Below are positions 13,951 through 43,372 of a DNA stretch of 64,000 nt, in pieces. The position numbers and the translations under genes are program-made. Numbering within the stretch: the stretch's first letter is position 1; each line of letters opens with the position of its first letter. The DNA is taken from contig CDMY01000499.1 of the NCBI GenBank assembly GCA_001179505.1, positions 186,001 through 250,000 of the forward strand, read 5' to 3'. The notes below the pieces were generated by a model that saw nothing but the letters and a program-made list of their open reading frames with translations, searched no databases and was not told where the DNA came from. The stretch comes from Vitrella brassicaformis CCMP3155. Lineage: Eukaryota > Protista > Chromerida.

Positions 13951-16712
13951 CTATACGATTGATTGATACCACAGGACCTAACCAAACACACCAGTGGTCC
14001 TGTCCTCCCATCCGTCTTCTATATATTCACACACACACACCATCCACCTGGCTGCCCGCTCGGACGACCTTGTCGCCCGCCCGCATCTCCACCCACCCAT
14101 CACCATCGCCACCGCCATGCGGGCTGCTCCCATACCGCAGCAGCACCCCAAACCTGCCCACGCCCCTCTTGCGGCCCGACCCATCCTCCATGCCCTGGGT
14201 GATGGTGGTCAGGGACTGCAGCACCGATGCCGTCACGGTGCCAGTCTGCGGGTCCACATTGATCGACGGGCACCTCTTACAGGAGCCCAGCGAGTAGAAG
14301 TCCAGGTTGCCGATGTGCACGGGAATGTCTGGCGAGTCGGCCCAGCTGTTCTCAATCAGCGGAGGCAGCCCACTCACAATCAGGTTGCCGCGAAACCTGG
14401 AGAGGGAGAGAAGCAAGCAAGGAAGACACCCACACCCACACACACGTGAGGCTCACTCACTTGCAGTCAGTGTGTCTGTGTGTGGCCGGCCCGGTGTGTT
14501 GTTTAACAGCGTACCTGTCGGCCTCCATGATGCTAAGTCCCGATGTGCGCTGCAGGTGGTCGAGGGAGCTGCTGGATACCAGCAAAAAGGGCGACGTGTT
14601 GGCATAGTTGCTAAGCAGCCGACGGCCATCGCCACCACCCTCTCCCCCAATGTCACTGTCCCCCTCTGAATCCACCAGCCTGACGCCATAGCCGAGACGA
14701 TCACCGAACCACCGCGCAACCGCCTCGTCGCCTTCCCCATCAGCACCCACACCGGTGCCACTTTCACTATCTTGATGATGCACCATTAGGCGGATGACAG
14801 ATAGCAGGGCTGACGGGCGGCCCCGCAGGGCTATGGGTATCCTCAGCGACGACTCACTGCGCCCCTCATCGGCGAATGACAGCACCATGACCAGTCGGTC
14901 TACGTCACACTCCAAAGCCACCCGCAGCTGCGCCAGCTTGGGCTCGCTCGTCCGGCTGATGACCCGGGGCATCTTCTCGGCACTGGTAGTGCGCTCGAGC
15001 CGGAATCTTCTGTCGAGCAGCAGCCCGCCTGTGCGAAGGTCGATGACCCATCTGGCTAGCGACACGCCGCCGCAGCTCTTGATCGGATATATACAGAGAG
15101 ACGACAAGACACCCTCAGCCGCATGATGGCCATCAGCAGGGGGAGAGGGAGTGGAGGCCGGCGGCAATGCTGGTGGCGTGACAGGGCCGTCTTGTCTGAG
15201 GGAGCACTGGGGTGCGGGGGCCGGAGTGTCTGGCTCATTCATGACGTCTTGTCGGATGAAGTCGATGAATCGGTCCACATCAGCCAGGGTGGACGAGAAG
15301 CCGAACGACAGCCGGATGCACCCCGTCGGCTGCCCGTCGATGGTGTCCACGTCGTCACCACACACATGCCCCGACATGAAGTGCCGCTCGAGGTCAGCCG
15401 CGGTCAACTGCAGGTGCGTCTGGCAGCCGCCCGTGTTGCAGTGGCACCCAGTGCGAAACACAATGCCCCTCTCGCGCGCCTTTCCCGCAACCGACGAGTA
15501 CGGCAGCACATCCCCGGTCGGTGACAAGACCACGCAGGCGACGACCGGCCCCTGCCGCCTCGGCCAATCCTCCTTGTGGTGGTCGCCGAATATCCGGAAG
15601 ACGCGCCCACCCTGCCGCCATGTGAGAGCCGCCATCCTCTGGTAGGCGTAGTGCGTGACAGCCTGCATGTGCTGCTCCAGCTGCTCCATGCTGAAACGGC
15701 GGAACACCGCCTCAAAGGCCATGGGGACGGCGGCGATGCCGAGGAAGTGTGGGCTGCCCGCCTCGAGCCTGTCGCATAAGGCGGCCTTCTCAGCCACGAA
15801 CGCCGATGTGGCCGCGACGGCCTGTACGGTGCCGCCACCGAAGGATGGTGGGGAGAGGAGGGGGGCGGCGCTGTGGCGCACGATGAGGCCCCCCAAGCCA
15901 GTGGGGTAGCCGAATACCTTGTACAGCGAGAAGACCATGAAGTCGACGGGCGTCCGGGAGAGGTCAATGCGGCTGGAGGCGGCCAGCTTGGATGCATCGA
16001 GCAGCACACGGTAATGTAGCTGATGATGCGGGATGGCGGGTTCCATCAGGGATGGGAGCAGCGACAGGTCGCCTTTGAGGCCGCTGAAATTTGACTCGCC
16101 CGTGACGATCAGCAGATTGGGGGGAGGGGGTGCGGACGAAAACGCCTCATGAGGGCACTGGGAGGGAGGGGGAGAGGGCGAGGGCGAGGGCGGCTCAATG
16201 CTCCGTCGGCCGATGTAGGAGGGATCGGCCACATCGGCGAGTCTGTCCATCTCGTAGGTCGCTACTCGCGCACCGTGCCGGAAGGCATACTGCCGCATGC
16301 CCACCACACTCGTGTGCGACTCGACAGGGTAGGCGAACACACTCCCAGGCCCAAAGGCAAACCCCTCAGCCACTACCCGCAGGCTCTCCGTCGCACCAGA
16401 AGTGAAGACCAGGCTGTACTCGTCCGACGCAGCCCCGAAGAAGGTCAGCAGCTGCCGTCGTGCCGTGTCGATGGCCTGCTCGGCTGCATGGCTGCTGTGT
16501 GGGTTGAGATGGAGGCCGGACAGCAAGTGCTGGCAGTGGTTGCGGACGAGGCTTTCGGGGTAGAGTGCTGCGCCGGCATGGTCGAGGTAGACAGTGTCCT
16601 GGAGGCGACCAAACTCCTCTGCGCGCCAGTCCTCGATGGCACGGCTGTAGCCGGCAGGGAGGGTAGATGCCGACTCATCGCTGGTATCAGGATGGCTGGC
16701 CGGCTGACCCAT
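13951..16712 (-). CDS. MOCOS: Molybdenum cofactor sulfurase (NifS-like PLP domain + MOSC_N + MOSC)
   Basis: YLDHAGAALY, FTSGATESL, DASK, FSLYKVFGYPTGLGGL (PLP Lys), RTGCHCNTGGCQ (persulfide Cys), IYPIKSCGG, DRRF, RFRGNLIV and CKRC. The last small exon (to 13951) is tentative. Confidence 0.95.
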
Positions 16713-17285: not shown

Positions 17286-20200
17286 ATGGGCAAGAACAAG
17301 GCCCATGCCGCCAAGGGCGCCAAGAAACCACACACAGACAGGTAGGTACCCACATCTCTCACAACCCACACACGCACAAAACACAAGTAGGCTGCCTGTC
17401 GTCTGTCGGTCTGTTTGTCTGTGTGGGGTGCACGGTTGCAGGGCAGCAGCTGCCGCGGCGGCTGCGCCTTCTGCCTCTGCTTCCTCTCGTCCGGTAGACG
17501 GCGTGTGTGTGAGTGAGCCGCCCTACGCCACGCTCCAGTGGCCCCGAGAGCAGCTGTCGATAGGCAGGGGGGAGGCAGGGGCGCTGGAAGGGAGGAGTAT
17601 TGGGGTGCGGAACCTCAGGGCGGTCTTCACTCCCACACTCATCGACAGGGGACATGGTGAGTCTGTGCGGTGTGTGTGTGTGGTGTATGCGATGGGGGCG
17701 GTGTGTGTATGTGTGTGTGTGTGCAGATGGGCCAGAGGGTGGTGGTGGTGGTGGTGTGTGTGGGGTTGGGATGCAAGTCCATCTACAGCCGCTGCAAGAC
17801 GATGGGCAGTACTGGTGAGGCAGCCAGCCAGCCAGCCAGCCAGAGGGGTAGATATGTGTGTGTGCTGCCCTTCGCACTCAGGTGCAGTGTGAACGTGCTC
17901 GTCCGCATCACGCTCGTCAACCACAAAGACGACAACAGATCCGTCACACAGGTACATACCCGTAGGCACAGCACAGGATAACACAGGACAGGACAGGACG
18001 GATAATACGGCCTTCCTTCTAATGTGGTGCCGTATGGCTGGCTGCGTGTGCAGGGTCGTGTGTTGACAACAGGCCAGGGGTGCCCGCCCTACACCTTCTG
18101 GCCCTTCATCGGCCTCGACAGGCTGCAGACGCCCGACGAGGGATTCGCAACCACACAAGGTACACATTGGATCCATCCATTCATCAGGGATTGTGTCTGT
18201 GTCTGTCTGTGCGTCTGAGTGAGTGCAGGCGTCGTGACGTTTCGCGTGTGTGTGGTGCCCCGGTTCCAGTGCGACATAATCGCGCAATTGGACAAACCAC
18301 AACCATCGCAAGGTCAGTCAGAGGGGCCGACAGACAGACCTGACCCACCGATGCAGGGTCCCATTGGTTGCGGGTGTGTCTGGTCTGTGTGCAGGTGTGG
18401 ATCTGGTTGCGGGCGATGGCTGCCATTCGTCCATTCTGCCCCGCAGCATTGTCCCAAAACACAGACCCACACCACCACTGCTGCAGGTACCTACCTACTT
18501 GAGACAGACCCACCCGACGACAGAGTCTTTCGGTCCTCACCTCTGTGTGTATGTGTGTGTGTGGGTGGGTCAGCCTCTGCTGTGCATCCCCTCGGTGCGC
18601 TCCATGTGTCTTGACCGGTGCAACGCACTCCGGGCACATCAAGATGGCTACACAGACCGTGAGATAGATACCTGTGGAGTGGACACACACCCCATCCACA
18701 CCACACACGAAACAAGGAGTCATATCCCTTGCTGTGCTGTATTTCATTTCTTTCACAAACTGGTCAGATCCAAACCTGCTGTCGTCGCTGGTGTCGCTGT
18801 GTGAGCACTTCGCCGCCATCGACAGGCTGCCAGAACCATCTCCTCCTCCCCAACCTGCGCAGAGGGGCGAGCCTGCAGAGATGGCGTGGCGGTGGCCGCC
18901 AGCTGATGGGCGTGACGGTGCCGGGGGCATCACTGCATCCCAAGCACATATGCTGCAGATGGACATGGCTCTGCAGGTGATTCAGTCACACGCACACACG
19001 CATCATGATGTCGTCATGCTATCACAATTGTGAGGTCGTTCGTGCTCTTGTCAGAATGTCTTTGAGTCGTTTGTGCACAAGTGTTGCGATGGCGATCTGG
19101 CCAAGATGACCGACCCGGCGGCTTATGTCGACCGATTCACCCCGTTCCTGCAACACGCACTCACACCGACGCCCCCATCGCCATCGCAGCAGCGGCAGCA
19201 GCAGGAGCATCGACACCCACAGACGCCCGCAGACACCCACACCAACGGCTGCACGCCTCCTGTGACAGACAGGGACCAGGTGGCCAGCCATGCAGCTGCA
19301 AACACGACAGCAGGCGGCACCGTCTGTGTCTGTGCGGTGTGGGGGCGATCAATCAGGATGATGCTGCTGCGGGTGCGATCGAGATGCCTCCGGAAGGCTC
19401 AATGGCAGTTGACGGCGAGGGCAATCTGCCCCCAACGAGCAGTCCACTGGAGGTAAGTGGGTGAGCAGGGTGAAGATCAAAGAGGGAGAGAGGGAGAGGG
19501 GTGAGGGAGGGAGGGCGGCGTACGACAGCATGGCCGAGAGGTATGTGGGCTTGTGTGTGTCTGTCTGTGTGTGTGTGCAGTGTCGTGTGATTCATCGGGT
19601 CTCCTGTCGTGGGATGAGGTGCAGCTACGCCTTTGCCACCACATCCACCGCCATCGACCTCGATGTCACCAAACAATACTCGTACGATGGATGGACGGAT
19701 GGATGGATGGACTATAGGTGCCGCAACGTTCCCTGTTGTCCAGGTCTGTTCCTCAGCTGCTCCGCGAATACTGCCGGCCACAAGAGATCGAACGTACACA
19801 CACACCCTTCCACCATCAACACACCTTCACTACCCCTTGTTTGTCAGCTCTCCCTCCTCGTCTGTCTGTGCTTCCGGTGTGTCTGTCTGTCTGTGGCACC
19901 TACCCAGGTTACAACCTGAGCCTGCTTCGTCTCGGCGTCCAGCGTGTGGTGCGGCAGAGGTCCTTCGACCCAAACGCACAGATCATCTGCATGCGATTCA
20001 CATACACCAACGGCACCGCCACACCACCGCCACCACCAGCGGCCCCAGCCCCAGCACCGGTATCGGCATCGGCATCAGCTCAGCCCGGCCCCAACCCCCC
20101 CATTTTGCTGGTCCCCGACGGCATGGACCTGTCGGCCATCGAGCCACCACCACCTCCCACACCGCCACATAGGCGCCGCAAACACGCAGACCAACACCAA

Positions 20201-23200
20201 CCACACGAGCTACCAGCTGCTGCGGCAGCGGCAGCGGCACCAGCAGCTGACGTGGGGGCGGACGGCACCGACGGCCACACAGAGGGTCGCGTCTATGACC
20301 TACACAGCCTGCTGGTGGCCGCTGAGGGGTTTGGGGGCGGTCGTGTGCTCATGTCGGTGGTGCATCACCGCTTCAGACGGGGAAACTGGCGCGTCTTCTA
20401 CGATGGGACGGTCAGTCTCGCCGCAGGGTGCCCTGCCCGACAACCACCCAGGATGTGTGCGGTTTGGTGTGTGGTGTGGTGGATGCGATGCAGGTGTCGG
20501 AGAGGGGCATGTGTGAGCAGCCTCTCTTCCACTCCATCCCTGATGTGGACCACTCGTCGTGGGTGTCATGTCGGCCCGGCTTCACCATCCTCCAGGCCAT
20601 CTACATCAAGGCGGGCGTCTTCGCGGGGGAGGAAGGCGGCGGCGTGGTGTGTCCTAGCTATGTCGAGAGCCCGCTGGACCTCACTGCCAGCCCACCATAT
20701 GTCGGCCGGGAGGCACCATTGCAGGCCATCAAAACCAGAGAGGTCAGAGAGGGAGAGGTCACCCACACAAGCCACAAGCCACAAGCCAACAAGACGGCAT
20801 ACGGCATGGGTGTGATGTCTTGTGATGTGTTGTGTAGGTGAAGGTCGTGTCGTGTGATGCGCTGCGTCGTCTCCGTGGCGGTTGGTGGCGGCTGACCTGT
20901 GACGCCATGCAGCACGTCCCGCTGCCCACCGAGGCCGTCACCACCATCACTGCTGACAGGTGAGGTGGGTCGGTGCAGTGCAGAGGCACTCTGGCTGGAT
21001 GGACGGATGGATGGCAGACCCCCTCATGTCACGCGTGCGGGGTGGGGGTGGGTGTGTGGCTTGTGTGTTCAGGTCATCGACATTGCGTCAGATCAGCGCC
21101 AAGTACATCAAGAGGGACAAGGCAAGCAAGGACCAACACATGGCGGCCAATGACTCCACGGCCAGGTCTGTCTGTCTGTCTGTCTGTGTGGTGGCATCAA
21201 TGCAGGCGCAGCAGCAGGACAGCGTCAGGAGGCCTGTGAGCACACACACACACAGTGCCCATGGACACCCTTCGTGTGTGTGTGTGTGTGTGTGTTTGTT
21301 GTCAGCCTGACGTGTCTGAGTGGTATCTCTTCCCGAGCGGCGGCAACAGCGCCGCCCTGATGCTCCTCAACATGAACGACAAACCTGTAGAGATGGCCGC
21401 TGTCATGGTCAGCCACATGACCACACACATACACACACACACACACACACAGAGAGAGAGGGGGGAGATTTCATGACGGTGTTGGTTTTGTTTGTGTCTG
21501 TGTTGCAGCGTCTGTTGGGCAATGGGTGTGACGGTGTGTGGCTGCTGGCCGTGTCGCACTGCGACAGCCTCACCACGGTCAGCACAGTTGGCCATGCCCC
21601 CAGACCGCCCCCCCCAACCACTGTGTGAGTCTGTCAGGCCCAGGCCGTCGAGCGTGATTTGGTCAACGGCACCCTCTCGGATGAGAAGCCATTCACTCTC
21701 ATAGTCAAGGCAAGCCGGAGGGGGTGTTGGCGAACGAATGCGTGTGTGTGTGCATGTGTGTTGCTGACGTTCTGTGTGCAGTACTTCGACCCCGCCAAGC
21801 TCGTCATGTTCTGCCTGGGCACCGTCGTAAGCAGCAGCAACACAGACACAGACAGACAGGCAGACACAGATACTCATGCAGCCGGCCTGCTGCCCTTTGC
21901 TGCCTTCCCACAGGCCCTTGGTGCCGACATGCCTCTCGGACATATCGCGTAGGCCCCCACCCCACCACCCTCCCCCGCCCGCAATGCCTCACACACACCT
22001 GCTCCCCCGCCTTGTCCTCTTGTGCGTGTGTGTGTGTGTGTGTGTGTGTGCGCAGGCGGTGGGTTGTGGAAACGTTGCGCGAGGCGCGGGATGATGCCAA
22101 TGCAATCCCGTTGCCCGCCTTCCAATGGCCGACGGATGCCAAAACTCTGGTCGGTAGCCATGAGGCAGGCACATAGATAGCCACACGCCGGCAGCCAGCC
22201 ATCTACCTACCTACACGCCATGCTCTCTCTCTCTGTCTGAGTGTGTGTGTGCAGATGTGTCAGTTGGAGCATGTGTGGACGCCCTACCTGTCGATAGCGA
22301 TGCGCCATCCCGTGGGGAGGATACTCAGCAACAAGACGGTAGGCAGGCAAGGAGTGAGCCCAGCCCACACTCCATCAACATCCATCGTGCCCTCATTGCA
22401 ATCGTTGCGAGACTCTCTCTTCGTGTCCGTCTCTCTGTGTGTCCGTCCGTCCGTCCGTCCGTCCTGTCCGTCAAGGTCTCTGTGGTTGTGTATCAGCCGG
22501 TGCCCGATGGCTACCAGGCCTGCCGGCTGTGCGGCAGATACGAGGCCGGCAGCACTATCAACACACACGAGGGGTCAGCCAGTCTGAATGAGCCCCCCTC
22601 CCGACGCACACACACCCCTTAAAGCCACGGTGTCATGTGTGGTCTCAGTCACTGTTCGTTGGAGTGTTTCCACCTGGCCTGTCTCGACAAGATGCGGCCG
22701 CAACTCACCAAACTCATCGACACGTCTGCAGCCACACAAGACAAGACACACAGCCAGACGCGCACACACACAGACAGACAGACAGCCTGCACTCGTGTGT
22801 GCCTGCCTACAGAGGTGCGTGCGAGCGCAGCGACGTCAAGCACGCCAACTTCCCTGGTAAGGACACAAACACACACACACACACAAACAACATGTCCTCT
22901 CTCTCTGTGTGTGCAGGCTCCCTGCCCTGTTGGGTGACGGTGTCCGACCAGCCCCCACCGTGCAGCGAGGTCAACGGCGACTACATGCTCCAGCCACAGC
23001 TGCTCGACCAACATCCCGCATGGAAGAAACCGCCCCAACGCTCTCTCTCACCCCCACACCCACCAGGGGCGGGCAATATGGGCTTGTCGGCATTGCTGCG
23101 GAAGAACCCCCTGATGCTGCGGTACGATGGTGCGATGGGGTATTGGGAGGTGGTCAGCACCGCACCGGACGGCAAGACCTACTGCATCGCACGAGCCACC

Positions 23201-26200
23201 AGCGGCTCACGGTCGGCAAGAGGACGGACTGCTGGACAGGGAGGGCATCCTGAATGGGCGGATAAATGTGTGTGTGTGTGCAGTGTCGTTGGAATGGATC
23301 CTTGTACGATGGGTCTGCAGTGGTCGGTGTGGGACGGCGACAACGCCGCCTTCAGGGACAGCCCCACCATGACGCTCACGCCCAAAGGCGAAGGTATGGC
23401 CGCACGCCACCCATCACACCACACACACCCTCCCACACACATCTCACACACACCACACCACACCACACACACCCTTCCTCCATGTGTGTGTTAGGGAGAT
23501 TTGGTTGCCATGAGGCGCTGATAGTGTGCGGCCGCGAGGGCAGCAACGCGGCCCTCAACGGCGACTACGAGCTGATGCCACAGCGCTGGAACGGCCGGCC
23601 CGCCTACAGGAAGGCCACCAACACACACGGACAGATGGCCTTCCTCTACTTCAGGCAACACACACATACACACACACACACACAGAGAGGGAGAGACGGA
23701 CGGAGAGAGACCGTCTTCCTTCTGTTGTCGCTTTGCTGTGTGTGTGGCGTGTGTCAGGTCAGAGGTGGGTTGCTGGCAGATCTCACCTGTGCTGGGGTCG
23801 GCCCAGAATACCGTTGCGTCGTGCGGTGGGTGCGGGACGGTCTGGTGCCCGTCGGAGTGTGTGGCGGTGTGGGAGGTGTGGGACCCGGACCGACAGACAC
23901 GCACACTCGACAGGGGTATTCTCATCACACCCAGAACAGGTAGGTACCAGTGCATCCCCATCCCTCTCTGGGCGCCGCAGCCAACACCGCGAGCGACACA
24001 CCTGTGTGTGTGTGTGTGTGTTCGTGTCGATTCATCGTCAGCTGACTGCAGTCGCGATGGTGCGGGTGGGTCCGCCCCTGCCGTGGTGACCGTCTGGCGC
24101 CGCAAGGGAGAGGGAGTCGACACAGCCGACACCACAGACATGACGGGCGACTACTTCCTCACCGACCGCACTCACAACGGCCGCCCGTGCTACAAGAAAC
24201 ACGGCCCCACCATCCCGCCACCACCAGCAGCACCAGAAGCAGCAGGGGTGGAGGGTTGTGCAGATGGCGAGGGTGTTGGGGTGGACAGGTGGCTGTATTA
24301 CGACGCCAGCCGCGGTTTCTGGCAGATCGCGCCCGAGCTGGGAGACAAAGAGATCCTGGCCGAGGGAGGCAGAGAATGGTTGGTCTGCACCCGCTCACCA
24401 CCTCAGGCACACACACAGATGGTGTGTATGGGCGTGTGTCAGGTCTGCACTGCATCCGTGTGCGGAAACTCTGCGGTGGTGGGTGTGGGACGGCAGCAAA
24501 GAGGCCTTCGTGCAGGACCACCAGATCGCCCTCACAGAAGGTGCCATGCCCGCATCCCATCCCATCCACCCTCTCGTCCCTCGTCGATCTATCTAACCAT
24601 ATATATTCCCTCTCTGTGATGTGGGTGTGTCAATCAGCGTCGGGTTTCCCCGCGGCTCTCGAGGTGTCGGGTCGTGTCGGCTTCAACAGCCACATCAACG
24701 CCGCCTACACGCTCATGCCAGATCTGTTCGACGGCCGACCGGCATACAAGTCCGCACCATCGCACAACCGCCCAGAGCATCCCCCACACCCGTCCCCCGC
24801 CACCCCTTCTCCCCCACGAGTCACTCCCGACTCGCCACCGATGCCCAAGGGCCAGAAGCGACACCGGGCAGCGTCGATGGGCGACGGCAAGGCGGCTGTG
24901 AGGGCGGTCAAGGGCAGCAGTGGCAGCAGCGGTAGGGTGAAGGGCACCAGCACCAGCAGCACTAGTGGCCCGTCGGTGTACCTCTTCTTCCGCGCGGCGA
25001 CGGGGAGGTGGGAGCTGAGCGCTGAGCTGGGGTCGCCTCTCACACTGGCAGAGAGCACTGTCCAATGGTCAGCCTGTCACTCAGTGAGAGGTTTCGGTGA
25101 AAGTGATGTGTTGATGGTACTGGCCGATTGCTGACTGATGTGTGATGTGTGTGTCAGGTCGGCGTTCTCGCCGCACACGATCTCTGGCGTGTGGTGTGTG
25201 TACGACGGGGACGCCTTCAGACCCGACGCCAACATCGTCATCAAGCCGCTTCCCAAGCGTACGCACAGACTCAACGCAACACAACACAACACAACACAAG
25301 CACATCGATCCTTGCTCTCCTTATGCAGAGGATGGTGATGGCGGCTCCCCTCCCCTGTGCTATCTCCGTGTGACCCACGGCGCCCCCCGTCTGGCGCCCG
25401 GCACCACCGCCACCTCAGGCCCCCCTCTGCCCACATCACCCGCATCGCACATGCACCACCAGCCATCACCACATGCGTCACCATCACCACTGTACAAGAC
25501 CGAGGACCCTCACAGGGCAGCCGGAGAGTCGGCGCATGCGGCCGACGGACAAGAGGCGCGTGAAGGGGAGCCGCCAATGTTGGCTGCAGCAGCTGATGGT
25601 GACGGTGATGACGAGATAATTGACTTGCCCCCTGCAGCTGATGCGTTGGCAGAGGAGGCCAATCACAGGGAGGCGGCCACGCATGACCTTGACGCATCCG
25701 ACTCGGCCTCGCCCCATGACCATGACGAGCACGACCATGAGCAGGAGGACAACGTCCCGTCGCCTTCAGGCGAACAGCAGCCACAGGCGCATGACGATGA
25801 CAATGAAGACGAAGACGACGACGCTCACGACGACGATGCAGCTGGTGCCGCCCATCCGGCGAAATCGCAGCTGCGCAACGCCAAGCGGAAGGAGAAGAAG
25901 CTCCGTCGTCAGCAGGAGAGGGAGGCGGCTTTGGCCAGGCAGAAGGTGCAGCAGGCTGCCGAGAAGGCCGAGCAGCGACGGCAGAGGAAGATGGAGAGGC
26001 AGCAGAGAGAGAAGGAGAGAGAGGAGCAAGAGCGCAAAGAGAAGGAGGCGGCCGAGCAAAGAGAGAGGGAGAGGGAGGAGAGGGAGGCGGCGGCAATGGT
26101 GCACAAGTCGGTCCTGTCGGCGGCCGTGAACGCCAAGAAGACCACCGCCAAGGCCGACAAGGACAAAGGCAAAGACAAGCGTGGCACGAAGGCTGACGCT

Positions 26201-29200
26201 GAGGCCAACCAGGCCCCACCCCCACACCCGCCGCCGCAGCAGCAGGAGCAGGAGACCAAGGCAACGGGCCCTGCCCCTAGCAGCAAGGCGGCAGCGGCTG
26301 GCCGTGTGAGCCCCAAGGGGCAGGAGCAGCCGGACAACAAAAACACACGAGCACAAAAGGTGGGAGGGACGCACTCAACTCGACAGGGGACGGGCAATGG
26401 TGGATGGATGGATGGATGGACGCTCCTTTGGTGTGCTGTGTTTCATGAATCCTTTGTTTGTCCTTCCTCCGTCCGTCGTCATGCAGCAGCGTGTGGGTCA
26501 TTCGAACAGCGCTAGCAGCGTGCATCAGCGCTGGCTGCCCAAGGGGTCCCCTCATCAGGAGGCCATGTCGGCCGTGTCATCGGGAGCGGCCACCCCCACA
26601 CAGGCCGCACCTGCCACGGACAAGAGCAAGCGGGACAACGCAACAACCATGACCATCGAACGGTCCGTACACATGCGCCCCTCCATCACGTGCACCGTTG
26701 CACCTTGGTGTCTGTCTGTGTGTGTGTGTGTGCCAGCGCTGAGCGAGAGGTGTACTACGGCGCTGTGCAGCACCTCTCCAGCCACCAGTGAGCAGCCACC
26801 AACACACACACACACACACGCTCCCTATCGTGCTGTCACGGCCACTGAGCTGTCCTCTGTCCGTGTGTTCCGGTGGGTGGGTGCAGTTCGGTTCCCCTCA
26901 GTGAGCTCGCCATGATCCTTCAATCCAGTGCTCGTCCGGCGATGGACCACCTGGTGCTTCATGTGGGGCCGGAGTCCCTGGTGCAGCTGCTGCGGCGCTC
27001 TCCGGTGTTCATCGTCAGCGACGGCATGATACAGACAAATGTCGAAAGTGAGCTAAACGGCGATAGAATATTATGCTCTTAATGGATCCCTCCCTCCCTC
27101 CCTCCCTCCGTGTGTGTGTCAGTGGTTGGTTGGGACACGCTCAAGGGCCGGATCATCGCAGAGGCACACATGGCGCTCGAACGAAACACGTAAACGACTT
27201 ATATTCTACAAATTGACCACGCATGGCTTCATTCTCTTTCTTTGGCTCCTCCTTCTGTGTGTGGTCTTTCCCTTTCACATGTGCAGGTTTCTCGACGCAC
27301 GCTCGCTGCTCGACATCCTCTCGCAAGGTAGGGAGCCTCGCTACACCCACCCTCTCTGCCAGCGCAATCATCACCCTAGCTCCATCTCTGTCTTGCCTGC
27401 CCTCTGCCCTCCTGTGTGCAGCAATCCCCGGTGTGGAGCAGCTGCTGCATCACCGCAGCCAGGCAGCCACGGCCGCCAACATGCTCCACCCGCTTCATCG
27501 GCCCGCCAGGAATCGCAAGAGGGGCTCATCGCACGCCCATAGCCACCACACACACGTGACGGAGACCTTCATCGCCCATCTGTTAGGCCGCTCGGCTGCT
27601 CCCGGCGTGCATGTGGCGATGCGCCTGGACAGTGAGGGGCGGGAGGTGATGCCGGTGATGTCGCTGCGGCCCCTGAGGGGCGCGGGTCGGCAGTATCTGC
27701 CCTTTGAGGTGTCGGATGAGGTCAGATTTGACGGCCGGCCTGACCCTTCGTCGTGTGAGCCGGGGAGGGGCAAGAAGAAGCGGCACAGCGATGGCGATAC
27801 CCCACACAACGACATCGCACACGAGGCCAATGGGTGAGAAACAAAGGGATGGGCGGGGCGGACACACCACGATTGATAAACACATAATGCCTGTCGTCTC
27901 TTTCTCTCAGGTCTGGTGTTGCGAATGGCCACAATGGACTGCCCGTCATCCTTCCCCGGCACAACAACGAGCCCTCCCTCACCCCACCAGCCGAGCCCAG
28001 CACCACATTGGCAGCCCCTCCTCTCAACAGGTTCTTCATGCCGACTCCCCGGCCCCCACAGCCGCCCCCTCCTCGATCCGCCATCCTCCCCGCTGCCGCC
28101 AGCGAAAGAGCCACAGACGGACTGCAGGGCCGCCACGTGTACCATGTTCCTGTGAGCGGCATGCACATGGTACACGTGGCGGCCCTGGGTGGCGTCACGA
28201 GTGAGATCGACATGGGCCGGGCCATGTATGTGGAGCAGCTGGAGCAGCAGATGATTGAGAGCTCGCGGGCCGCGCACAGCGCGACACCTGACGCATCGCC
28301 ACAAGCCGCGCCAGCCCAGCAGCAGCAGCAGCAGCAGCCACAGGCGCCCCCTTTCTTGCAGCAGCAGGTCGAGCTCCGGCTGCCCATTTCAGCTGCCCAT
28401 CACCGTGAGGAAGGTCTCCTTCCCTCACCAAGTGGCGGTGTGAGAGGAGCGATGGAGGTGAACGATCTGAGGGAGCTGCCGGGCAGCATCGCCAACATGG
28501 CGGCCATGTCGATCATCAGGAACGCCGCGACCAACACCCCTGAGGCGCAACACATCCGGCCACCGCTGCCACATGCCGGTGGCCCCACCCCTGCATCAAC
28601 CCCGACGCCCTCTTACTCGACCAATGCTCGCATGGTCGGGATGCCCTCCCCCGCCGCCCGCCCCCCTCCGCCACCACCGCCGCCCNNNNNNNNNNNNNNN
28701 NNNNNNNNNNNNNNNNNNNNNNNNNNNNNNNNNNNNNNNNNNNNNNNNNNNNNNNNNNNNNNNNNNNNNNNNNNNNNNNNNNNNNNNNNNNNNNNNNNNN
28801 NNNNNNNNNNNNNNNNNNNNNNNNNNNNNNNNNNNNNNNNNNNNNNNNNNNNNNNNNNNNNNNNNNNNNNNNNNNNNNNNNNNNNNNNNNNNNNNNNNNN
28901 NNNNNNNNNNNNNNNNNNNNNNNNNNNNNNNNNNNNNNNNNNNNNNNNNNNNNNNNNNNNNNNNNNNNNNNNNNNNNNNNNNNNNCATGCCGTCGCCACT
29001 AGCAGCGCCGCCGGGCCCTCTCCTACCACCTTCGATGCCCATGCCGATACCTGTTTCTCACCAGCACGGCTTCACGGCTTCCAACATCGCATTCTCTCAG
29101 TACACGGCTTCGCTGCATCAGCAGCAGCAACAGCAGGCCCAGCTGCAGCAGGGGTCACCACAGGCACTGCACCAGGACGAGCAGGGTAGCAACCACCACA

Positions 29201-30751
29201 ACCGCATTGTGGAGCAGCGCATCAAGCAGATGCTCCACATCGATGGTGGCCCTGCCCCTCCTGCTGCTCCTGCCGTCCCGGCTGCAGCTGCCGCCCCCAG
29301 CCCCTCATCCCACGAGGCAATGAGTGCTATCCCCTCGCCACGCTCGCCACGCTCATCGGATGTGCACCCTTACCCACCAGCACCAGTGCCCTTGCCGATG
29401 CCCATTGCGATGCCGCTGCCGCTGCCAGCACCGTCGTCATACCAGCAGCACCCGCTGCTGCACCATGTGGACGATGTGAGCGTCAGCATGTCGGGACCGA
29501 TCGGCTCGCATCACTCAGGTGTGGGGTTGAGCTCGAGCCCCTCACTCGACAGCAGGGGGGAGGGCGACAGCACACACCTGGGTGGAGGAGCTAGTGGCGA
29601 GCCAATGCCCTGGGCGAGCCCAGCAGGTGAGAATGAATAATGTATTTTGATCCACATGAGCTCAGCTGCAGTATCTGCCATGAGCACCCGCCGTCTGTGT
29701 GTGTGTTGGTGTCTTTTCATCAGGTGTCCCCCTTCCGTCAGCCCTTCACTTCGGCGGCTCTCCCCACCCGATGCTCGTCGGGCGACCCAATGGCGTCGTC
29801 CCTCCCCCGCCCCCTGCTCACATGCAGCCCCGGCCCCGACCAACACCCCTCCCCATCCGCCCTCTGCAAAGCTACGCCGGCTCCTCTCTCCACCACCACC
29901 ACCACCAGGACACAAGAGTGCCCATCCACCAGACCAGGATAGCAGCTCCGGCCAGCAGCGCCAATCTGGTGTCGTCTGATGGAGGCGTGGGCCAGCAGAT
30001 GTCACCGACTTCAGAGTCGAGTGGCCCTCCATCGTCTGTGGTGGACAACCAGCCGGGCGGGGCGCCGCCGCCCAACGGTGTGTGGCAGCAGGTGCCCAGT
30101 GGCCCCACGAGCGACTTCGAGAACCTGCCAAAGGCCATTAGGAGCCACGAGCTGCCCGTCACTAACCAATACCAAGCGGTGAGTGAGTCAGGGAGGTAGC
30201 GGGATGGACTGAACGCATTCGCGAATGTGTGTGTGGTCCTTCCTAATTTGTATGCGAAGGCTGGTGAGGCCTCGCCGGGTCTATCTGAGTGGGACACGTG
30301 TGTGGAGGTGCGGTGTGTGGCGGCGTCGGTGGATGTCCAGACCATCCGGGACATCGCGAGAGAGTCGGGCGCCGCCCAGTGGTACGCCGACGTCGATGCG
30401 GCCCGCAGTTGGGACCGCCGCTGCCACGTCATGACACTCTACTTCCTCTTCAGCACGGTACAACCACCCAAAGACACCCACACACCCACACACACGGATG
30501 TTTTCTTGTCTATGTGCAGGCTGAGGATGCGTCGGTGGCCGCGAATCGTTTCCCGCGCGACGCCCGCCTCCACATGCCGCACCCACCACCGCCGCCACTC
30601 AAGCACTGGACAATCAAGGTACGCTCTCGCAATCGCGCACAGCCTAACGACGGCAGGGGAAGTGTGTGTGGTGTTGACGGATGCACAGGTGAGCCAAGGC
30701 AGGTTGACCAACATCCAGGGACCGCCGCTGCCGTCAGGGCTGTTCAACTAG
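17286..30751 (+). CDS. Giant USP7-like pseudo-deubiquitinase: MATH - inactive USP fold - UBL1/2-like - PHD-like - 4x unknown repeat - acidic/coiled coil - wHTH-like - Pro/Gln-rich - RRM-like
   Basis: About 40 exons splice in frame from ATG 17286 to TAG 30751; most junctions were checked by hand, and the 300-N gap is unresolved. MATH: VRNLRAVFTP, WCSVNVLVRITLVNHKDDNRS. USP: LLQPLLCIPSVR, IDLDVP..SVPQLLREY, PNAQIICMRFTY, YDLHSLLV, WRVFYDGTVS, QAIYIK. UBL-like: VKVVSCD, LIVKYFDP, VVVYQP. Confidence 0.75.
28686..28985. other. Assembly gap (300 N) inside the Pro-rich part of the USP7-like gene
   Basis: Run of N flanked by C-rich, poly-Pro-coding sequence. Confidence 0.99.
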
Positions 30752-31219
30752 CCAGACAGACAGACAGACATCCATCGTGGGTTTGCAAAGGAATGCAGCG
30801 GTGGTTGGTGTCCACATCTGCATGAGATGAGCTGAGCTGAGATGGAAGCGAAGCAAGGAAGAGTGAGTGCATTGATTCATTCCTTCGTTGATGGTGACAC
30901 ACACGCGATGGGTAGGTAGAACGGGGGGATGCATGCATGGATGGAGACGTATACACACATACCTATGCAGACAAGGATTGCGTAGCGACGGACTCTCACT
31001 CCCGGGCGGCGGCTGTTTTTGCGTGTGTGGACGACAGACAGGGGAAAGACCACAGGGTGTCGGTGTCGTGTTCAATGCACGGTCATGTCGCAGCATTTCT
31101 GGCTAGATCGGCCGTTGCGATCGGCCGTTGTCGGCCGTTTCGAGCGTACGTGTAGAAAAACGTTGCAGAAGTTCCGTCCAGCTGCAGGCTTGTCCAACTG
31201 CCCCCTTTGACGCTTGGAT

Positions 31220-32839
31220 CATGGCCCGACTTGCCCTTTACCTGGTCTGTGTTTGCTGTGTGTGTCTTGTTGCGGCATCCGTCGACCCCGATGTCACGGA
31301 GAAGCTTGAGGGGCTGCTGGAGTTCGTCCTGAACGTACTCGCACGGACCAAAGGTGATGGCGCGGACGAGGCCAACGCAGCTGACGCAGATGAAACGGGT
31401 GGGCCTGGATGAGGTCAAACACACTGTATGTATCTATGTTTTTCCCGCCTACCATAGCTGTTGCGCATGCTCCCAAGGCCAACAAGGGCGAGGTGTGCCC
31501 CGTCCTGAGCATGGAGGCCATGGCCGAGGAGGACGGCAACGGGCTCTCGTTGCCGAGCGCGATCGTGTCCGCACGCAGCGAGCACTACATCGACCTCCCA
31601 TTGGTAAGGCTAGGACCACTCTCGAGGTGGCGGACAAACGGCCGGACTGGAGTGCGTGCAGGGCATGGCGAGAAGGCTGGGATACACTGAGATCGTCATG
31701 GCCGTCCATTCGCACGAGGGAGATGCCAACATCATAGTGCAGTCGCAGCAAGGGTGAGTGTGCGTGTACCACATCTTCAACTGACAAGCACGTATCCTGA
31801 TGTCACCTGGGCCAGGCACGTGTATGGCAGCTCGACGGCGCCTTCGACAAAAAAAGCCAGCCTTTTCGAAGACACCATCATCGTGCCCACCGCAGCCAAT
31901 GTGACTGCACATGCTTTCGTGGTGCCCGCTGGCGGCGAAGATGCCAATGTGGTGAGACAGAAAGGCCGCCTCAGAGACCATTCCGACGTCCATACGTATT
32001 GCCGTGTACCTGCTCTGTGTGGGTGTGTCACATGTGTCAAACAGACGGTGTTGCTGTCGTTGCGGAATGAGGGCTGCAAGGTGCCCTTCGCAATCCCCGG
32101 CATACACAACAAGACAATCGTCGACCTCTCTGCGGACCTGCGTGACGTCATGCTGCCTCCTCCGCGCGACGACATGAGCCAGACTTTCGCCTACTACAGA
32201 AAGCTGTCGAGCGTGTCCGAGAAAGACGTGGCCATAGCAGAGAAGCTTATTGAGGAGCTACGCAAGGGCCACGATTCTGAGAAGCTGCTGGCGAGCAGCG
32301 GACTGGAGCCCTTTGAGTACCGACTGGACGCTAAGGACACTCAGAAGCTCTGGAAAGACAAGGTGAGGGACACAGCAGGACAGAAATACATCGGAAAGAT
32401 CAGATGTGTGGCTGACTCGATGCGTTTCTGTGGTGTATTTGTGGTCCGTGTTGCACTTTCGCTCCCCCAGGAGACGCCGGTGCCCAGGAGCCGATTGACA
32501 ACCAGAGAGCAGGGTAGATTGACGAACTGCGAAAGAGTGGCGATGCCCGCATGTGTGTGTGTGTGTGTGTGTGTGTGGTTTTTGGCTGCAGCTGAAGTCG
32601 TTACATCCGAAGTAAACTGTCCCACATCTTGTTGCTGCTACTGCTATTATCAGAATTGTCCGGACGGCCGCGGGCTGACACGGCCATCATGCGAAGAGGG
32701 TGCGGATCGCAGCCCGTGCACATTGTTTTCCGTCTCCAGCCCGTGTTTGAATGCCCCTGCCTCGTGCATCTGTCCCTGCACCAACACAGAATATCAGATC
32801 TCGTGTGAGTTCGGCCCACTCGCCGATGGAATGTGCTAG
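31220..32839 (+). CDS. Secreted hypothetical protein with Cys-rich C-terminal domain
   Basis: Signal-peptide-like MARLALYLVCVCCVCLVAAS. Several spliced exons. Terminal exon CPTSCCCYCYYQNC...CICPCTNTEYQISCEFGPLADGMC* with 14 Cys. Confidence 0.6.

Positions 32840-40162: not shown

Positions 40163-43372
<3,210 letters not shown>

What the first reader, a model, noticed from the sequence alone, without database searches (positions are those of the whole stretch)
17286..30751. 13.5-kb gene encoding a pseudo-USP7 scaffold fused to chromatin- and RNA-binding-type modules
Seen: about 40 exons splice in frame into one protein of roughly 3,000 aa (estimate). The N-terminal half follows USP7/UBP12 colinearly (MATH, USP fold, UBL1-2-like). 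The C-terminal half replaces UBL3-5 with a PHD-like finger, four copies of an unknown ~110-aa domain, an acidic/coiled-coil stretch, winged-helix-like segments, a Pro/Gln-rich region and a terminal RRM-like domain. Known: USP7 MATH and UBL1-2 are substrate-docking hubs. Inference: a non-catalytic adaptor that couples USP7-type substrate or ubiquitin recognition to chromatin or RNA. I do not recognise this architecture from any described protein.
Basis: partly seen in the sequence, partly recalled or inferred. Interest (0 to 1): 0.82.

Follow-up and report, generated by a model that had tools for sequence, protein, structure and literature searches.

The report
Giant inactive USP7-like scaffold gene
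This alga (Vitrella brassicaformis) has one 48-exon gene for a protein of about 3,000 residues whose front end looks like a catalytically dead copy of the deubiquitinase USP7, joined to four copies of an unnamed beta-barrel domain and a long disordered tail; a parasite relative has the same layout, and what the protein does is unknown.

Summary
The annotated Vitrella brassicaformis protein CEM18313.1 (2,449 aa) maps exactly onto 45 + strand exons starting at 17286. Spliced cDNA-type contigs from two studies show that its last intron is false.

The 300-N gap (28686-28985) is really 17 bases, seen in both an RNA-type and a DNA-type contig. With those bases the frame runs on to the stop at 30749-30751. 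The gene has 48 coding exons and encodes about 3,008 aa.

- **MATH domain:** supported, and it is of the USP7 type.
- **USP core:** invisible to Pfam and to PDB sequence searches. Support comes from a profile-profile match of its His-box block to Vitrella's own USPs (P 1.4e-4, z about 8 against shuffles) and from protein-language-model neighbours that are nearly all UCH/USP7 clusters. The catalytic His position holds Val, no Cys box is detectable, and the MATH DWGF peptide-binding motif is absent.
- **UBL1-2 and RRM:** only sub-threshold Pfam hits, and only in a colinear 3,366-aa Digyalum oweni ortholog.
- **PHD-like and winged-helix labels:** unsupported.
- **Four repeats:** real. One folds confidently (pLDDT 95) as an all-beta domain with no Pfam family and no clear PDB match, and it is widespread in protist proteins.

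An intact canonical USP7 lies elsewhere in the genome. I class this as a new variant of a known kind, the pseudo-deubiquitinase scaffold.

The parts
17286..30751 (+). Whole coding region: 48 exons, about 3,008 aa, from ATG 17286 to stop 30749-30751. Transcript contigs end at about 31065-31092.
   Evidence: Exact mapping of P0001; spliced contigs and gap bridge; frame check.
17443..18314 (+). MATH-like domain of the USP7 type (residues about 40-200, five exons). The DWGF peptide-binding motif is not conserved.
   Evidence: Profile A1 hits 11 PDB sequences, all USP7 MATH, best E 0.017. BLASTP to the Digyalum ortholog gives E 7e-7. The ortholog scores 31.5 bits on MATH_2.
18397..20748 (+). Degenerate USP (UCH-fold) region, residues about 208-745, with long low-complexity inserts. 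No recognisable Cys box.
   Evidence: ESM-Atlas neighbours are UCH/USP7 clusters, scores 0.93-0.94. No Pfam UCH hit. A Cys-box profile finds nothing.
20288..20628 (+). His-box block of the USP-like region (residues 620-705, across one intron). The catalytic His position holds Val639 (codon 20345-20347), next to Arg638.
   Evidence: hhalign of A3 against 15 Vitrella USP His boxes: P 1.4e-4, score 29.0; shuffles 10.8 +/- 2.3, max 20.8. Whole-protein scans give their top hit here and at the matching place in the ortholog.
20841..22338 (+). Region after the USP core (residues 745-977), possibly UBL1-2-like. It contains the 'YFDP' motif block at 21638-21826.
   Evidence: The motif block aligns to P0004 1427-1445 (E 0.07). 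That ortholog stretch is the Pfam USP7_ICP0_bdg hit at E 0.27. No hit in Vitrella itself.
22497..22858 (+). Identity unverified.
   Evidence: No Pfam hit at E <= 10. The spacing does not fit C4HC3. No counterpart is visible in the Digyalum ortholog sequence.
22919..25257 (+). Four tandem copies of an all-beta domain of about 110 aa (residues 1044-1613): 22919-23395, 23497-23938, 24041-24539 and 24637-25257. Each copy is split by one intron.
25331..26359 (+). One 1,029-nt exon: Pro-rich, then Asp/Glu/His-rich, then a Lys/Glu/Arg-rich stretch that is probably coiled coil (residues 1615-1957).
   Evidence: Translation; covered by spliced contigs.
26487..27834 (+). Middle region (residues 1958-2260). 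It holds a block of unknown fold conserved with the ortholog (residues about 2017-2100, 26738-27190). The winged-helix label is unverified.
   Evidence: Weak colinear BLASTP match, E 0.9. Alignment A7 has 28% identity. No PDB or Pfam match.
27912..29626 (+). One large exon, Pro/Gln-rich and probably disordered, that contains the assembly gap. The annotated intron 28458-28519 is not used.
   Evidence: Unspliced coverage by X6 rec15 and X7 rec18; gap bridged by X7 rec19 and X2 rec4; in frame.
28686..28985 (.). Assembly gap written as 300 N. Its true content is 17 bases, which keep the reading frame open.
   Evidence: read laying tables 5, 5c and 8: an RNA-type and a DNA-type contig both show 17 letters between; frame check.
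29724..30178 (+). Exon 45, a continuation of the Pro-rich disordered tail.
   Evidence: Joints 29627-29723 and 30179-30259 in X6 and X7. No Pfam hit.
30260..30751 (+). Unverified in Vitrella.
   Evidence: Joints in X6 and X7. No Pfam hit exon by exon. The ortholog C-terminus gives RRM_1 at E 0.14. No alignable similarity to the ortholog beyond poly-Pro.

Best explanation
This is a single expressed gene for a protein of about 3,008 aa. Its first 950 or so residues most likely descend from a USP7-type deubiquitinase in the order MATH, USP core, first UBL region, and have lost protease chemistry.

**What has been lost.** The His box is still detectable as a block, but the catalytic His position holds Val (Cys in the Digyalum ortholog). 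No Cys box can be found. The MATH domain also lacks the DWGF peptide-binding motif.

**What replaces the USP7 C-terminus.** USP7 normally ends in UBL3-5 and an activating tail. Here the protein carries instead:
- four copies of an unannotated all-beta domain;
- a charged stretch that is probably coiled coil;
- a conserved block of unknown fold;
- about 700 residues of Pro/Gln-rich disorder;
- a small C-terminal domain.

**Proposed mechanism (inferred, not shown).** The protein is a non-catalytic scaffold.
- The dead USP/MATH/UBL module keeps a binding role, for ubiquitin, a ubiquitin-like protein or a new partner. This would parallel the inactive USP domains of PAN2 and USP39/Sad1.
- The beta-domain repeats and the tail recruit other partners, possibly RNA through the terminal domain.

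An intact canonical USP7 elsewhere in the genome supplies the enzymatic function.
For: **One gene**
- Exact exon mapping.
- Spliced contigs from two studies, the gap bridged by 17 bases in both RNA-type and DNA-type contigs, and an unspliced read-through of the annotated last intron.
- An open frame to 30751.
- A k-mer share of 0.51-0.52 in X6 and X7 against 0.518 predicted for spliced RNA.

**USP7 descent**
- The MATH profile hits only USP7 chains in the PDB.
- Language-model neighbours of residues 1-760 are MATH+UCH+USP7_ICP0_bdg clusters (0.93).
- 24 of the 30 neighbours of residues 205-760, which exclude MATH, are UCH clusters (0.94).
- His-box hhalign gives P 1.4e-4 and z about 8 against 150 shuffles. 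Unbiased whole-protein scans put their best hit at that place in both orthologs.

**Colinear Digyalum oweni ortholog, P0004**
- Repeats match at BLASTP 2e-35 and MATH at 7e-7.
- These E-values are corrected for 24,736 families. For a family named in advance the per-family p is about 1e-5.

**Dead enzyme**
- Val639 sits at the catalytic His column, and Cys in Digyalum.
- A Cys-box profile finds nothing in P0001. Its best, non-significant placement in P0004 puts Ala at the Cys column.

**Canonical USP7 with intact Cys and His boxes** lies at C182.
Against: - Pfam finds no family at all in the 2,449-aa model at E <= 1, nor in its segments at E <= 10.
- Six-frame UCH, MATH, USP7_ICP0_bdg and USP7_C2 searches of the genome give no hit in the window.
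- PDB sequence and profile searches of the USP and UBL regions find no USP.
- The His-box profile does not retrieve Vitrella's own USP genes.
- Pairwise alignment to the canonical USP7 exons is not significant.
- A profile of the central 'fingers/palm' block does not land in the expected place.
- The only structure prediction of residues 1-1045 failed (pLDDT 35), so the USP fold has not been seen.
- I chose the His-box block by eye before testing it.
- Language-model hits at 0.93-0.94 also occur for 4-10% of shuffled sequences.
- There is no evidence here for binding to ubiquitin, substrates, chromatin or RNA.
Confidence: 0.6

Rival explanations
1. Only the MATH domain is USP7-related. The 550 residues after it are a lineage-specific, largely disordered region, and their USP resemblance is chance. 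The protein would then be a MATH-domain adaptor, not a pseudo-USP7.
For: - There is no Pfam UCH signal at any threshold.
- PDB searches find no USP.
- The Cys-box and central-block profiles fail.
- Pairwise tests against canonical USP7 are not significant.
- The AF2 model failed.
Against: - The His-box profile-profile score lies far outside the shuffles, and unbiased scans find it at homologous positions in both orthologs.
- Language-model neighbours of the region without MATH are mostly UCH clusters.
- The region sits exactly between a USP7-type MATH and a stretch that gives USP7_ICP0_bdg as one of only two Pfam hits in the ortholog.
Confidence: 0.2
2. There are two genes: the annotated 2,449-aa protein ends near 28540, and a separate gene after the gap encodes the Pro-rich and C-terminal part.
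For: - The public annotation stops at 28540.
- No single contig spans the whole locus, and contigs break at 28632-28665.
- A Met codon begins the post-gap frame at 28987.
Against: - The annotated terminal intron is unspliced in two RNA-type contigs.
- X7 rec19 joins 38 letters left of the gap to the right side, and the frame is kept.
- The DNA assembly breaks at the same Pro-codon repeat, so the break is an assembly effect.
- The Digyalum ortholog is a single complete ORF of 3,366 aa with a comparable tail.
Confidence: 0.07
3. The USP-like domain is still an active cysteine protease that uses non-canonical residues, for example the Cys in the Gly-Asp-Gly-Cys-His stretch at residues 215-219 (about 18418-18432).
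For: A Cys lies just after the MATH domain, roughly where a Cys box would begin. USP53 and USP54 were long thought inactive and later shown to be active (my own knowledge).
Against: - There is no His at or next to the catalytic His column in either ortholog.
- The Cys-box profile does not recognise that stretch.
- The Digyalum ortholog has no Cys there.
Confidence: 0.05

Closest known systems
USP7/HAUSP (plant UBP12/13): MATH, USP catalytic core, then five UBL domains
   Same: N-terminal MATH of the USP7 type, then a region with a USP His-box block, then a stretch that in the ortholog weakly matches USP7_ICP0_bdg (UBL1-2). The order is the same.
   Different: - No Pfam-detectable UCH domain.
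- No Cys box.
- Val or Cys at the catalytic His column.
- No DWGF substrate-binding motif.
- No USP7_C2 (UBL3-5) and no activating C-terminal peptide.
- About 2,000 extra residues of other modules.
- The genome keeps a separate canonical USP7 at C182.
PAN2 (USP52) and USP39/Sad1: proteins with inactive USP domains used as structural or binding modules in RNA metabolism
   Same: A USP-fold domain without catalytic residues, embedded in a larger non-protease protein. A possible link to RNA through a terminal RRM-like domain.
   Different: Those are not derived from USP7. They have no MATH or UBL modules and pair the dead USP with WD40 and an RNase D domain (PAN2) or with a ZnF-UBP (USP39). Their architectures and partners are known from experiments; none is known here. 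The comparison rests on my own knowledge.
Digyalum oweni EP00916_P027035 (P0004, 3,366 aa; transcriptome of PMC6733595)
   Same: Colinear uncharacterised protein: MATH, His-box-like block, 'FFDP' UBL block, five to six copies of the same beta domain, a conserved middle block, and an RRM-like C-terminus.
   Different: Much longer spacers in the USP-like region. More repeats that carry fewer insertions. No Cys/His-rich stretch before the repeats. 25-35% identity in the conserved blocks only.
Unannotated all-beta domain in ESM-Atlas protist clusters, combined there with EF-hand, EGF, TSP1, LDLa or RING domains
   Same: Same predicted fold as the repeat (TM 0.76-0.85, rmsd 1.4-2.4 A over about 100 residues). 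The same sequence core (Asn-Gly-x-Tyr, Gly-Arg-Pro-x-Tyr, then a conserved Trp) appears in P0003, P0006 and P0008.

Membership tests
USP7/HAUSP-type deubiquitinase | N-terminal TRAF-like MATH domain | tested here: met
   A two-ortholog profile hits 11 PDB sequences, all USP7 MATH, best E 0.017. The ortholog scores 31.5 bits on Pfam MATH_2 against a cut-off of 32. The Vitrella protein alone gives no Pfam hit, so this is marginal but specific.
USP7/HAUSP-type deubiquitinase | MATH peptide-binding groove with the DWGF motif | tested here: not met
   In the HMMER alignment to USP7 MATH together with alignment A1, the DWGF columns hold Pro-Pro-Tyr-Thr in Vitrella and Met-Ser-Leu-Gly in Digyalum. 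The alignment could be off by a residue or two, but no DWGF lies nearby.
USP7/HAUSP-type deubiquitinase | USP (Pfam UCH) catalytic core recognisable by profile | tested here: not met
   No UCH hit in the window in the six-frame search, in P0001 at E <= 1, or in its segments at E <= 10. Only language-model neighbours and a His-box profile-profile match point to the fold.
USP7/HAUSP-type deubiquitinase | Cys box with the catalytic Cys | tested here: not met
   A profile of 17 Vitrella Cys boxes finds nothing in P0001. In P0004 it finds only a non-significant placement, with Ala at the Cys column.
USP7/HAUSP-type deubiquitinase | His box with the catalytic His (Gly-His-Tyr) | tested here: not met
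   The block is homologous (hhalign P 1.4e-4), but the His column holds Val639 in Vitrella and Cys in Digyalum.
USP7/HAUSP-type deubiquitinase | UBL1-2 (Pfam USP7_ICP0_bdg) | tested here: inconclusive
   The ortholog gives a hit at E 0.27 on residues 1419-1453. That stretch aligns to Vitrella 888-906. The Vitrella protein gives no Pfam or PDB hit.
USP7/HAUSP-type deubiquitinase | UBL3-5 (Pfam USP7_C2) and the C-terminal activating peptide | tested here: not met
   No USP7_C2 hit in the window or in P0001. The corresponding position is occupied by the beta-domain repeats.
Pseudo-deubiquitinase (inactive USP domain, as in PAN2 and USP39) | USP fold present but the catalytic triad incomplete | tested here: inconclusive
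   Triad loss is shown for His and is likely for Cys. The fold itself is inferred, not seen, because AF2 without an alignment failed.
PHD finger | C4HC3 zinc-ligand pattern and a Pfam PHD match | tested here: not met
   No Pfam hit for residues 975-1045 at E <= 10. The spacing between the fourth Cys and the His is 1 residue instead of 4-5, and the last ligand pair is Cys-x6-His, as read.
RRM | Beta-alpha-beta-beta-alpha-beta domain with RNP1 and RNP2 motifs (Pfam RRM_1) | tested here: inconclusive
   The Vitrella exons give no hit when searched exon by exon. The ortholog C-terminus gives RRM_1 at E 0.14 and 12.5 bits, against a cut-off of 20.7. The two C-termini do not align. The joined Vitrella domain was neither searched nor folded.
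Winged helix | Match to a winged-helix fold or profile | tested here: not met
   No relevant Pfam or PDB sequence match for residues 1955-2265 or for the two-ortholog profile A7. The fold was not predicted.

The most novel reading that the evidence does not exclude
Relatives of apicomplexans keep a giant pseudoenzyme derived from USP7. In this reading a dead USP7 module still reads ubiquitin or a ubiquitin-like mark, or USP7-type partners. It is wired through a previously unnamed beta-barrel repeat family and an RRM-like tail to RNA or chromatin complexes. That would make it a ubiquitin 'reader' scaffold with no counterpart in animals, fungi or plants.
Probability: 0.25. Interest if true: 0.65.

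Novelty: new variant of a known kind. Interest (0 to 1): 0.45.

Why it matters
- **Pseudoenzyme evolution.** Inactive USP domains reused as binding modules are known (PAN2, USP39). I know of none derived from USP7 that keeps its MATH and UBL parts, and a full-text search for one found none. A case conserved between a free-living chromerid and a parasitic squirmid would add a new example in the lineage that leads to apicomplexan parasites.
- **Annotation fix.** The public protein CEM18313.1 lacks its last 560 or so residues because of an assembly gap that is really 17 bases.
- **An unnamed domain.** The repeat is a confidently folding all-beta domain with no Pfam family and no solved structure. 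It recurs in many protist proteins, so it is a candidate for a new domain family.
- **Limits.** Function is entirely inferred, and the USP fold rests on indirect evidence.

Tried and rejected
**Searches that found nothing useful**
- Pfam on the whole annotated protein and on nine segments: nothing.
- Six-frame searches of the genome with Pfam UCH, MATH, USP7_ICP0_bdg and USP7_C2: no hit in the window. The MATH and ICP0_bdg searches found nothing anywhere, so they say nothing about absence.
- phmmer against the PDB with the whole protein and with the MATH, USP and UBL segments: no relevant hit.
- Two-sequence profiles against the PDB for the His box, the UBL block and the middle block: no relevant hit.
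- Word-index homology searches with residues 1-1000, with residues 1-760, and with the Digyalum repeats: each found at most the query protein itself. The last one missed a known ortholog, so these blanks mean little.
- Search of the genome with residues 1-1000: no paralog.
- His-box profile against the genome: it did not retrieve the canonical USPs.
- Smith-Waterman of the canonical USP7 exons against the USP-like regions of both orthologs: not significant and not colinear.
- Profiles of the Cys box and of the central USP block, scanned over both orthologs: no support.
- Foldseek of the repeat model against the PDB: no hit below E 0.2.
- BLASTP and Smith-Waterman of the C-terminal halves of the two orthologs: only poly-Pro.
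- The look-up of encoding contigs for P0001: not on record.

**Failed prediction**
- AF2 of residues 1-1045 without an alignment gave pLDDT 34.7, so no fold search was made with that model.

**Rejected lead**

- The joined 3,008-aa model, and the joined C-terminal domain, were not handed to any search or folding tool. Exons were searched one by one by reference.
- Joining was done only inside scripts, for the frame check and local alignments.
- The 17 gap letters have no reference. They were used only in the frame check.

Full report
**Where we are.** The window is contig C499:186001-250000 of a 72.7-Mb, 1,064-contig assembly. The region has about 60% G+C and many chance open frames, so open frames alone prove nothing.

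**The gene model.** An exhaustive HMMER search with one repeat exon (window 24035-24379) returned a 2,449-aa protein, P0001. It maps with exact identity onto 45 + strand exons from the ATG at 17286 to 28540.

Runs X6 and X7 come from different studies and hold 0.52 and 0.51 of the sampled 31-mers of 17286-26500. The share of 31-mers lying wholly inside annotated exons is 0.518. These runs therefore behave as fully spliced RNA, and the annotated exon set is right in aggregate.

**The gap, tested first.** I laid X7, X6, X5 and X2 on 25700-31600.
- X6 and X7 contigs carry GT..AG joints at every annotated intron of that stretch. X2 and X5 do not, so X6 and X7 are cDNA-derived and X2 and X5 are DNA.
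- X6 rec15 (7,898 nt) runs from upstream of the start codon to 28632. X7 rec18 covers 28178-28665. Neither splices the annotated last intron (28458-28519).
- X7 rec19 (spliced) and X2 rec4 (DNA) both join 28685 to 28986 with 17 letters between. The 300-N gap is therefore 17 bases long.
- The last codon before the gap ends at 28685. Seventeen bases shift the frame so that it continues at 28987, in the only coding-looking frame after the gap.
- Both X6 and X7 show the further introns 29627-29723, 30179-30259, 30458-30519 and 30619-30688.
- The RNA contigs end at 31065-31092, and another transcript starts near 31213.

The result is 48 coding exons and about 3,008 aa. The public model is truncated by the gap.

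One caveat remains. The contigs break in a Pro-codon repeat at 28632-28665, where the DNA assembly breaks too, so no single contig covers the whole gene.

**The N-terminal half: standard searches fail.**
- Pfam finds nothing in P0001 at E <= 1 or in nine segments at E <= 10.
- Six-frame Pfam UCH, MATH, USP7_ICP0_bdg and USP7_C2 searches give no hit in the window.
- PDB sequence searches find nothing relevant.
- AF2 without an alignment failed (pLDDT 35).

Four more sensitive lines nevertheless agree with it.

1. **An ortholog exists.** P0004 is a complete 3,366-aa ORF from the Digyalum oweni transcriptome (source paper PMC6733595). It shares the repeats (BLASTP 2e-35) and the MATH region (7e-7). 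It also shares a motif block, 'IVKYFDP' against 'IIKFFDP' (E 0.07).
2. **Pfam on the ortholog.** Pfam gives MATH_2 at 2.4e-7 (31.5 bits, cut-off 32) and USP7_ICP0_bdg at E 0.27, on exactly that motif block. It gives RRM_1 at E 0.14 at the C-terminus. The latter two were among the only two hits listed for their segments. Their E-values are already multiplied by 24,736 families, so for families named in advance they are worth noting, though each is below threshold.
3. **The MATH profile.** A two-ortholog MATH profile (A1) finds 11 PDB sequences, every one of them USP7 MATH (best E 0.017).
4. **Language-model neighbours.** Residues 1-760 give MATH+UCH+USP7_ICP0_bdg clusters (0.93). Residues 205-760, which exclude MATH, give 24 UCH clusters among 30 neighbours (0.94). 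The tool itself warns that 4-10% of shuffled proteins reach 0.9.

**A direct test of the USP core.** I built profiles from Vitrella's own USP genes, using the loci.
- **His box: supported.** The aligned His-box-like block of the two orthologs (A3) matches the 15-sequence His-box profile with hhalign P 1.4e-4 and score 29.0. In 150 column shuffles the scores were 10.8 +/- 2.3 with a maximum of 20.8; the reversed alignment scored 18.1. I had picked that block by eye, so I also scanned the whole proteins. The best hit is 649-665 in P0001 (P 0.06) and 812-859 in P0004 (P 0.02), which are homologous positions.
- **Catalytic residues.** In the alignment the catalytic His column holds Val639 (next to Arg638) in Vitrella and Cys in Digyalum. 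The conserved Trp, the Asp-containing motif after it and the closing Tyr-Ile-Lys/Arg motif are kept.
- **Cys box and central block: not supported.** A Cys-box profile finds nothing in P0001. In P0004 its only placement is non-significant, just after MATH, with Ala at the Cys column. The central block is not recovered.
- **Other negative tests.** Pairwise tests against canonical USP7 exons are not significant. The His-box profile does not retrieve canonical USPs from the genome or from the PDB.

My reading is that this is a very degenerate USP core without protease chemistry. I give about 75-80% odds that it descends from USP7.

The MATH DWGF substrate-binding motif is also absent.

A canonical USP7 with intact Cys and His boxes lies at C182:106-115 kb.

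**The four repeats.**
- An HMM from the Digyalum repeats finds four units in P0001 (residues 1044-1613) and five to six in P0004. It also finds related units in three other proteins from public assemblies: P0003, P0006 and P0008.
- With a 21-sequence alignment (A4), repeat 2 folds at pLDDT 95.3 and pTM 0.88 as a nine-strand all-beta domain.
- Foldseek finds no PDB match below E 0.2.
- The ESM Atlas holds many protist clusters with the same predicted fold (TM up to 0.85), without a Pfam family, combined with EF-hand, EGF, TSP1, LDLa or RING domains.
- Vitrella has further copies at C581, C878 and C379.

The repeat is therefore a real, unnamed, widespread domain, presumably a binding module.

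**The rest of the protein.**
- The acidic and Lys/Glu-rich exon and the Pro/Gln-rich tail are plain in the translation.
- The PHD-like stretch has no Pfam hit and the wrong ligand spacing. I see no counterpart to it in the ortholog sequence.
- The 'winged-helix' region contains a block conserved with the ortholog (28% identity) but matches nothing.
- The Vitrella C-terminal domain gives no hit exon by exon and does not align to the ortholog's. Only the ortholog's weak RRM_1 hit speaks for an RRM.

**Verdict.**
- The gene most likely encodes a USP7-derived protein without protease chemistry, with an unusual C-terminal extension, conserved between a chromerid and a squirmid.
- That it acts as a scaffold is inference by analogy with PAN2 and USP39 (my own knowledge). 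Nothing here shows a link to chromatin or RNA.
- A full-text search found no description of a USP7-type pseudo-deubiquitinase.

Noticed in passing
window 28458-28540 and 28686-28985: The public protein CEM18313.1 ends in a false 7-codon terminal exon (28520-28540) created by a false intron. The cause is the assembly gap, which is 17 bases long, not 300. About 560 residues of the real protein are missing from the annotation.
   Followed up: yes
G000:C182:101000-119000 (L020, L021): This is the canonical USP7-type gene of Vitrella, with intact Cys and His boxes. It carries a low-complexity insert of about 90 residues between the His box and the following Trp/Asp motif, an 885-codon open frame downstream, and N gaps of its own. 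Its UBL region is not detected by Pfam USP7_ICP0_bdg in six-frame search.
   Followed up: partly
G000:C581:166459-169064, C878:136676-136930, C379:83229-83880: Further copies of the same all-beta repeat domain lie in other Vitrella loci (E 1.6e-10 to 8e-3 with profile A4), so the domain is a small family in this genome.
   Followed up: no
introns throughout window 17343-27911: Many of the 60-160-nt introns contain (GT)n or (CA)n dinucleotide runs, seen as Cys-Val or His-Thr runs in the frame translations.
   Followed up: no
window 31213-31600: A separate, much more deeply covered transcript starts near 31213, where a contig ends in an adapter sequence. It has an intron at about 31398-31457. 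This is the next gene downstream on the + strand.
   Followed up: no
P0008 residues 380-500 (assembly GCA_963575745.1): This 533-aa protein has three short copies of the repeat's N-terminal half, followed by two copies of a 50-residue unit of its own. Its gene call spans 187 kb.
   Followed up: no
window 14457-16712, minus strand: A 751-codon ATG-started open frame on the opposite strand lies just upstream of the gene. It is probably a neighbouring intron-poor gene.
   Followed up: no
window 42774-43073: A second 300-N assembly gap in the window. Its true length may also be much shorter than written.
   Followed up: no
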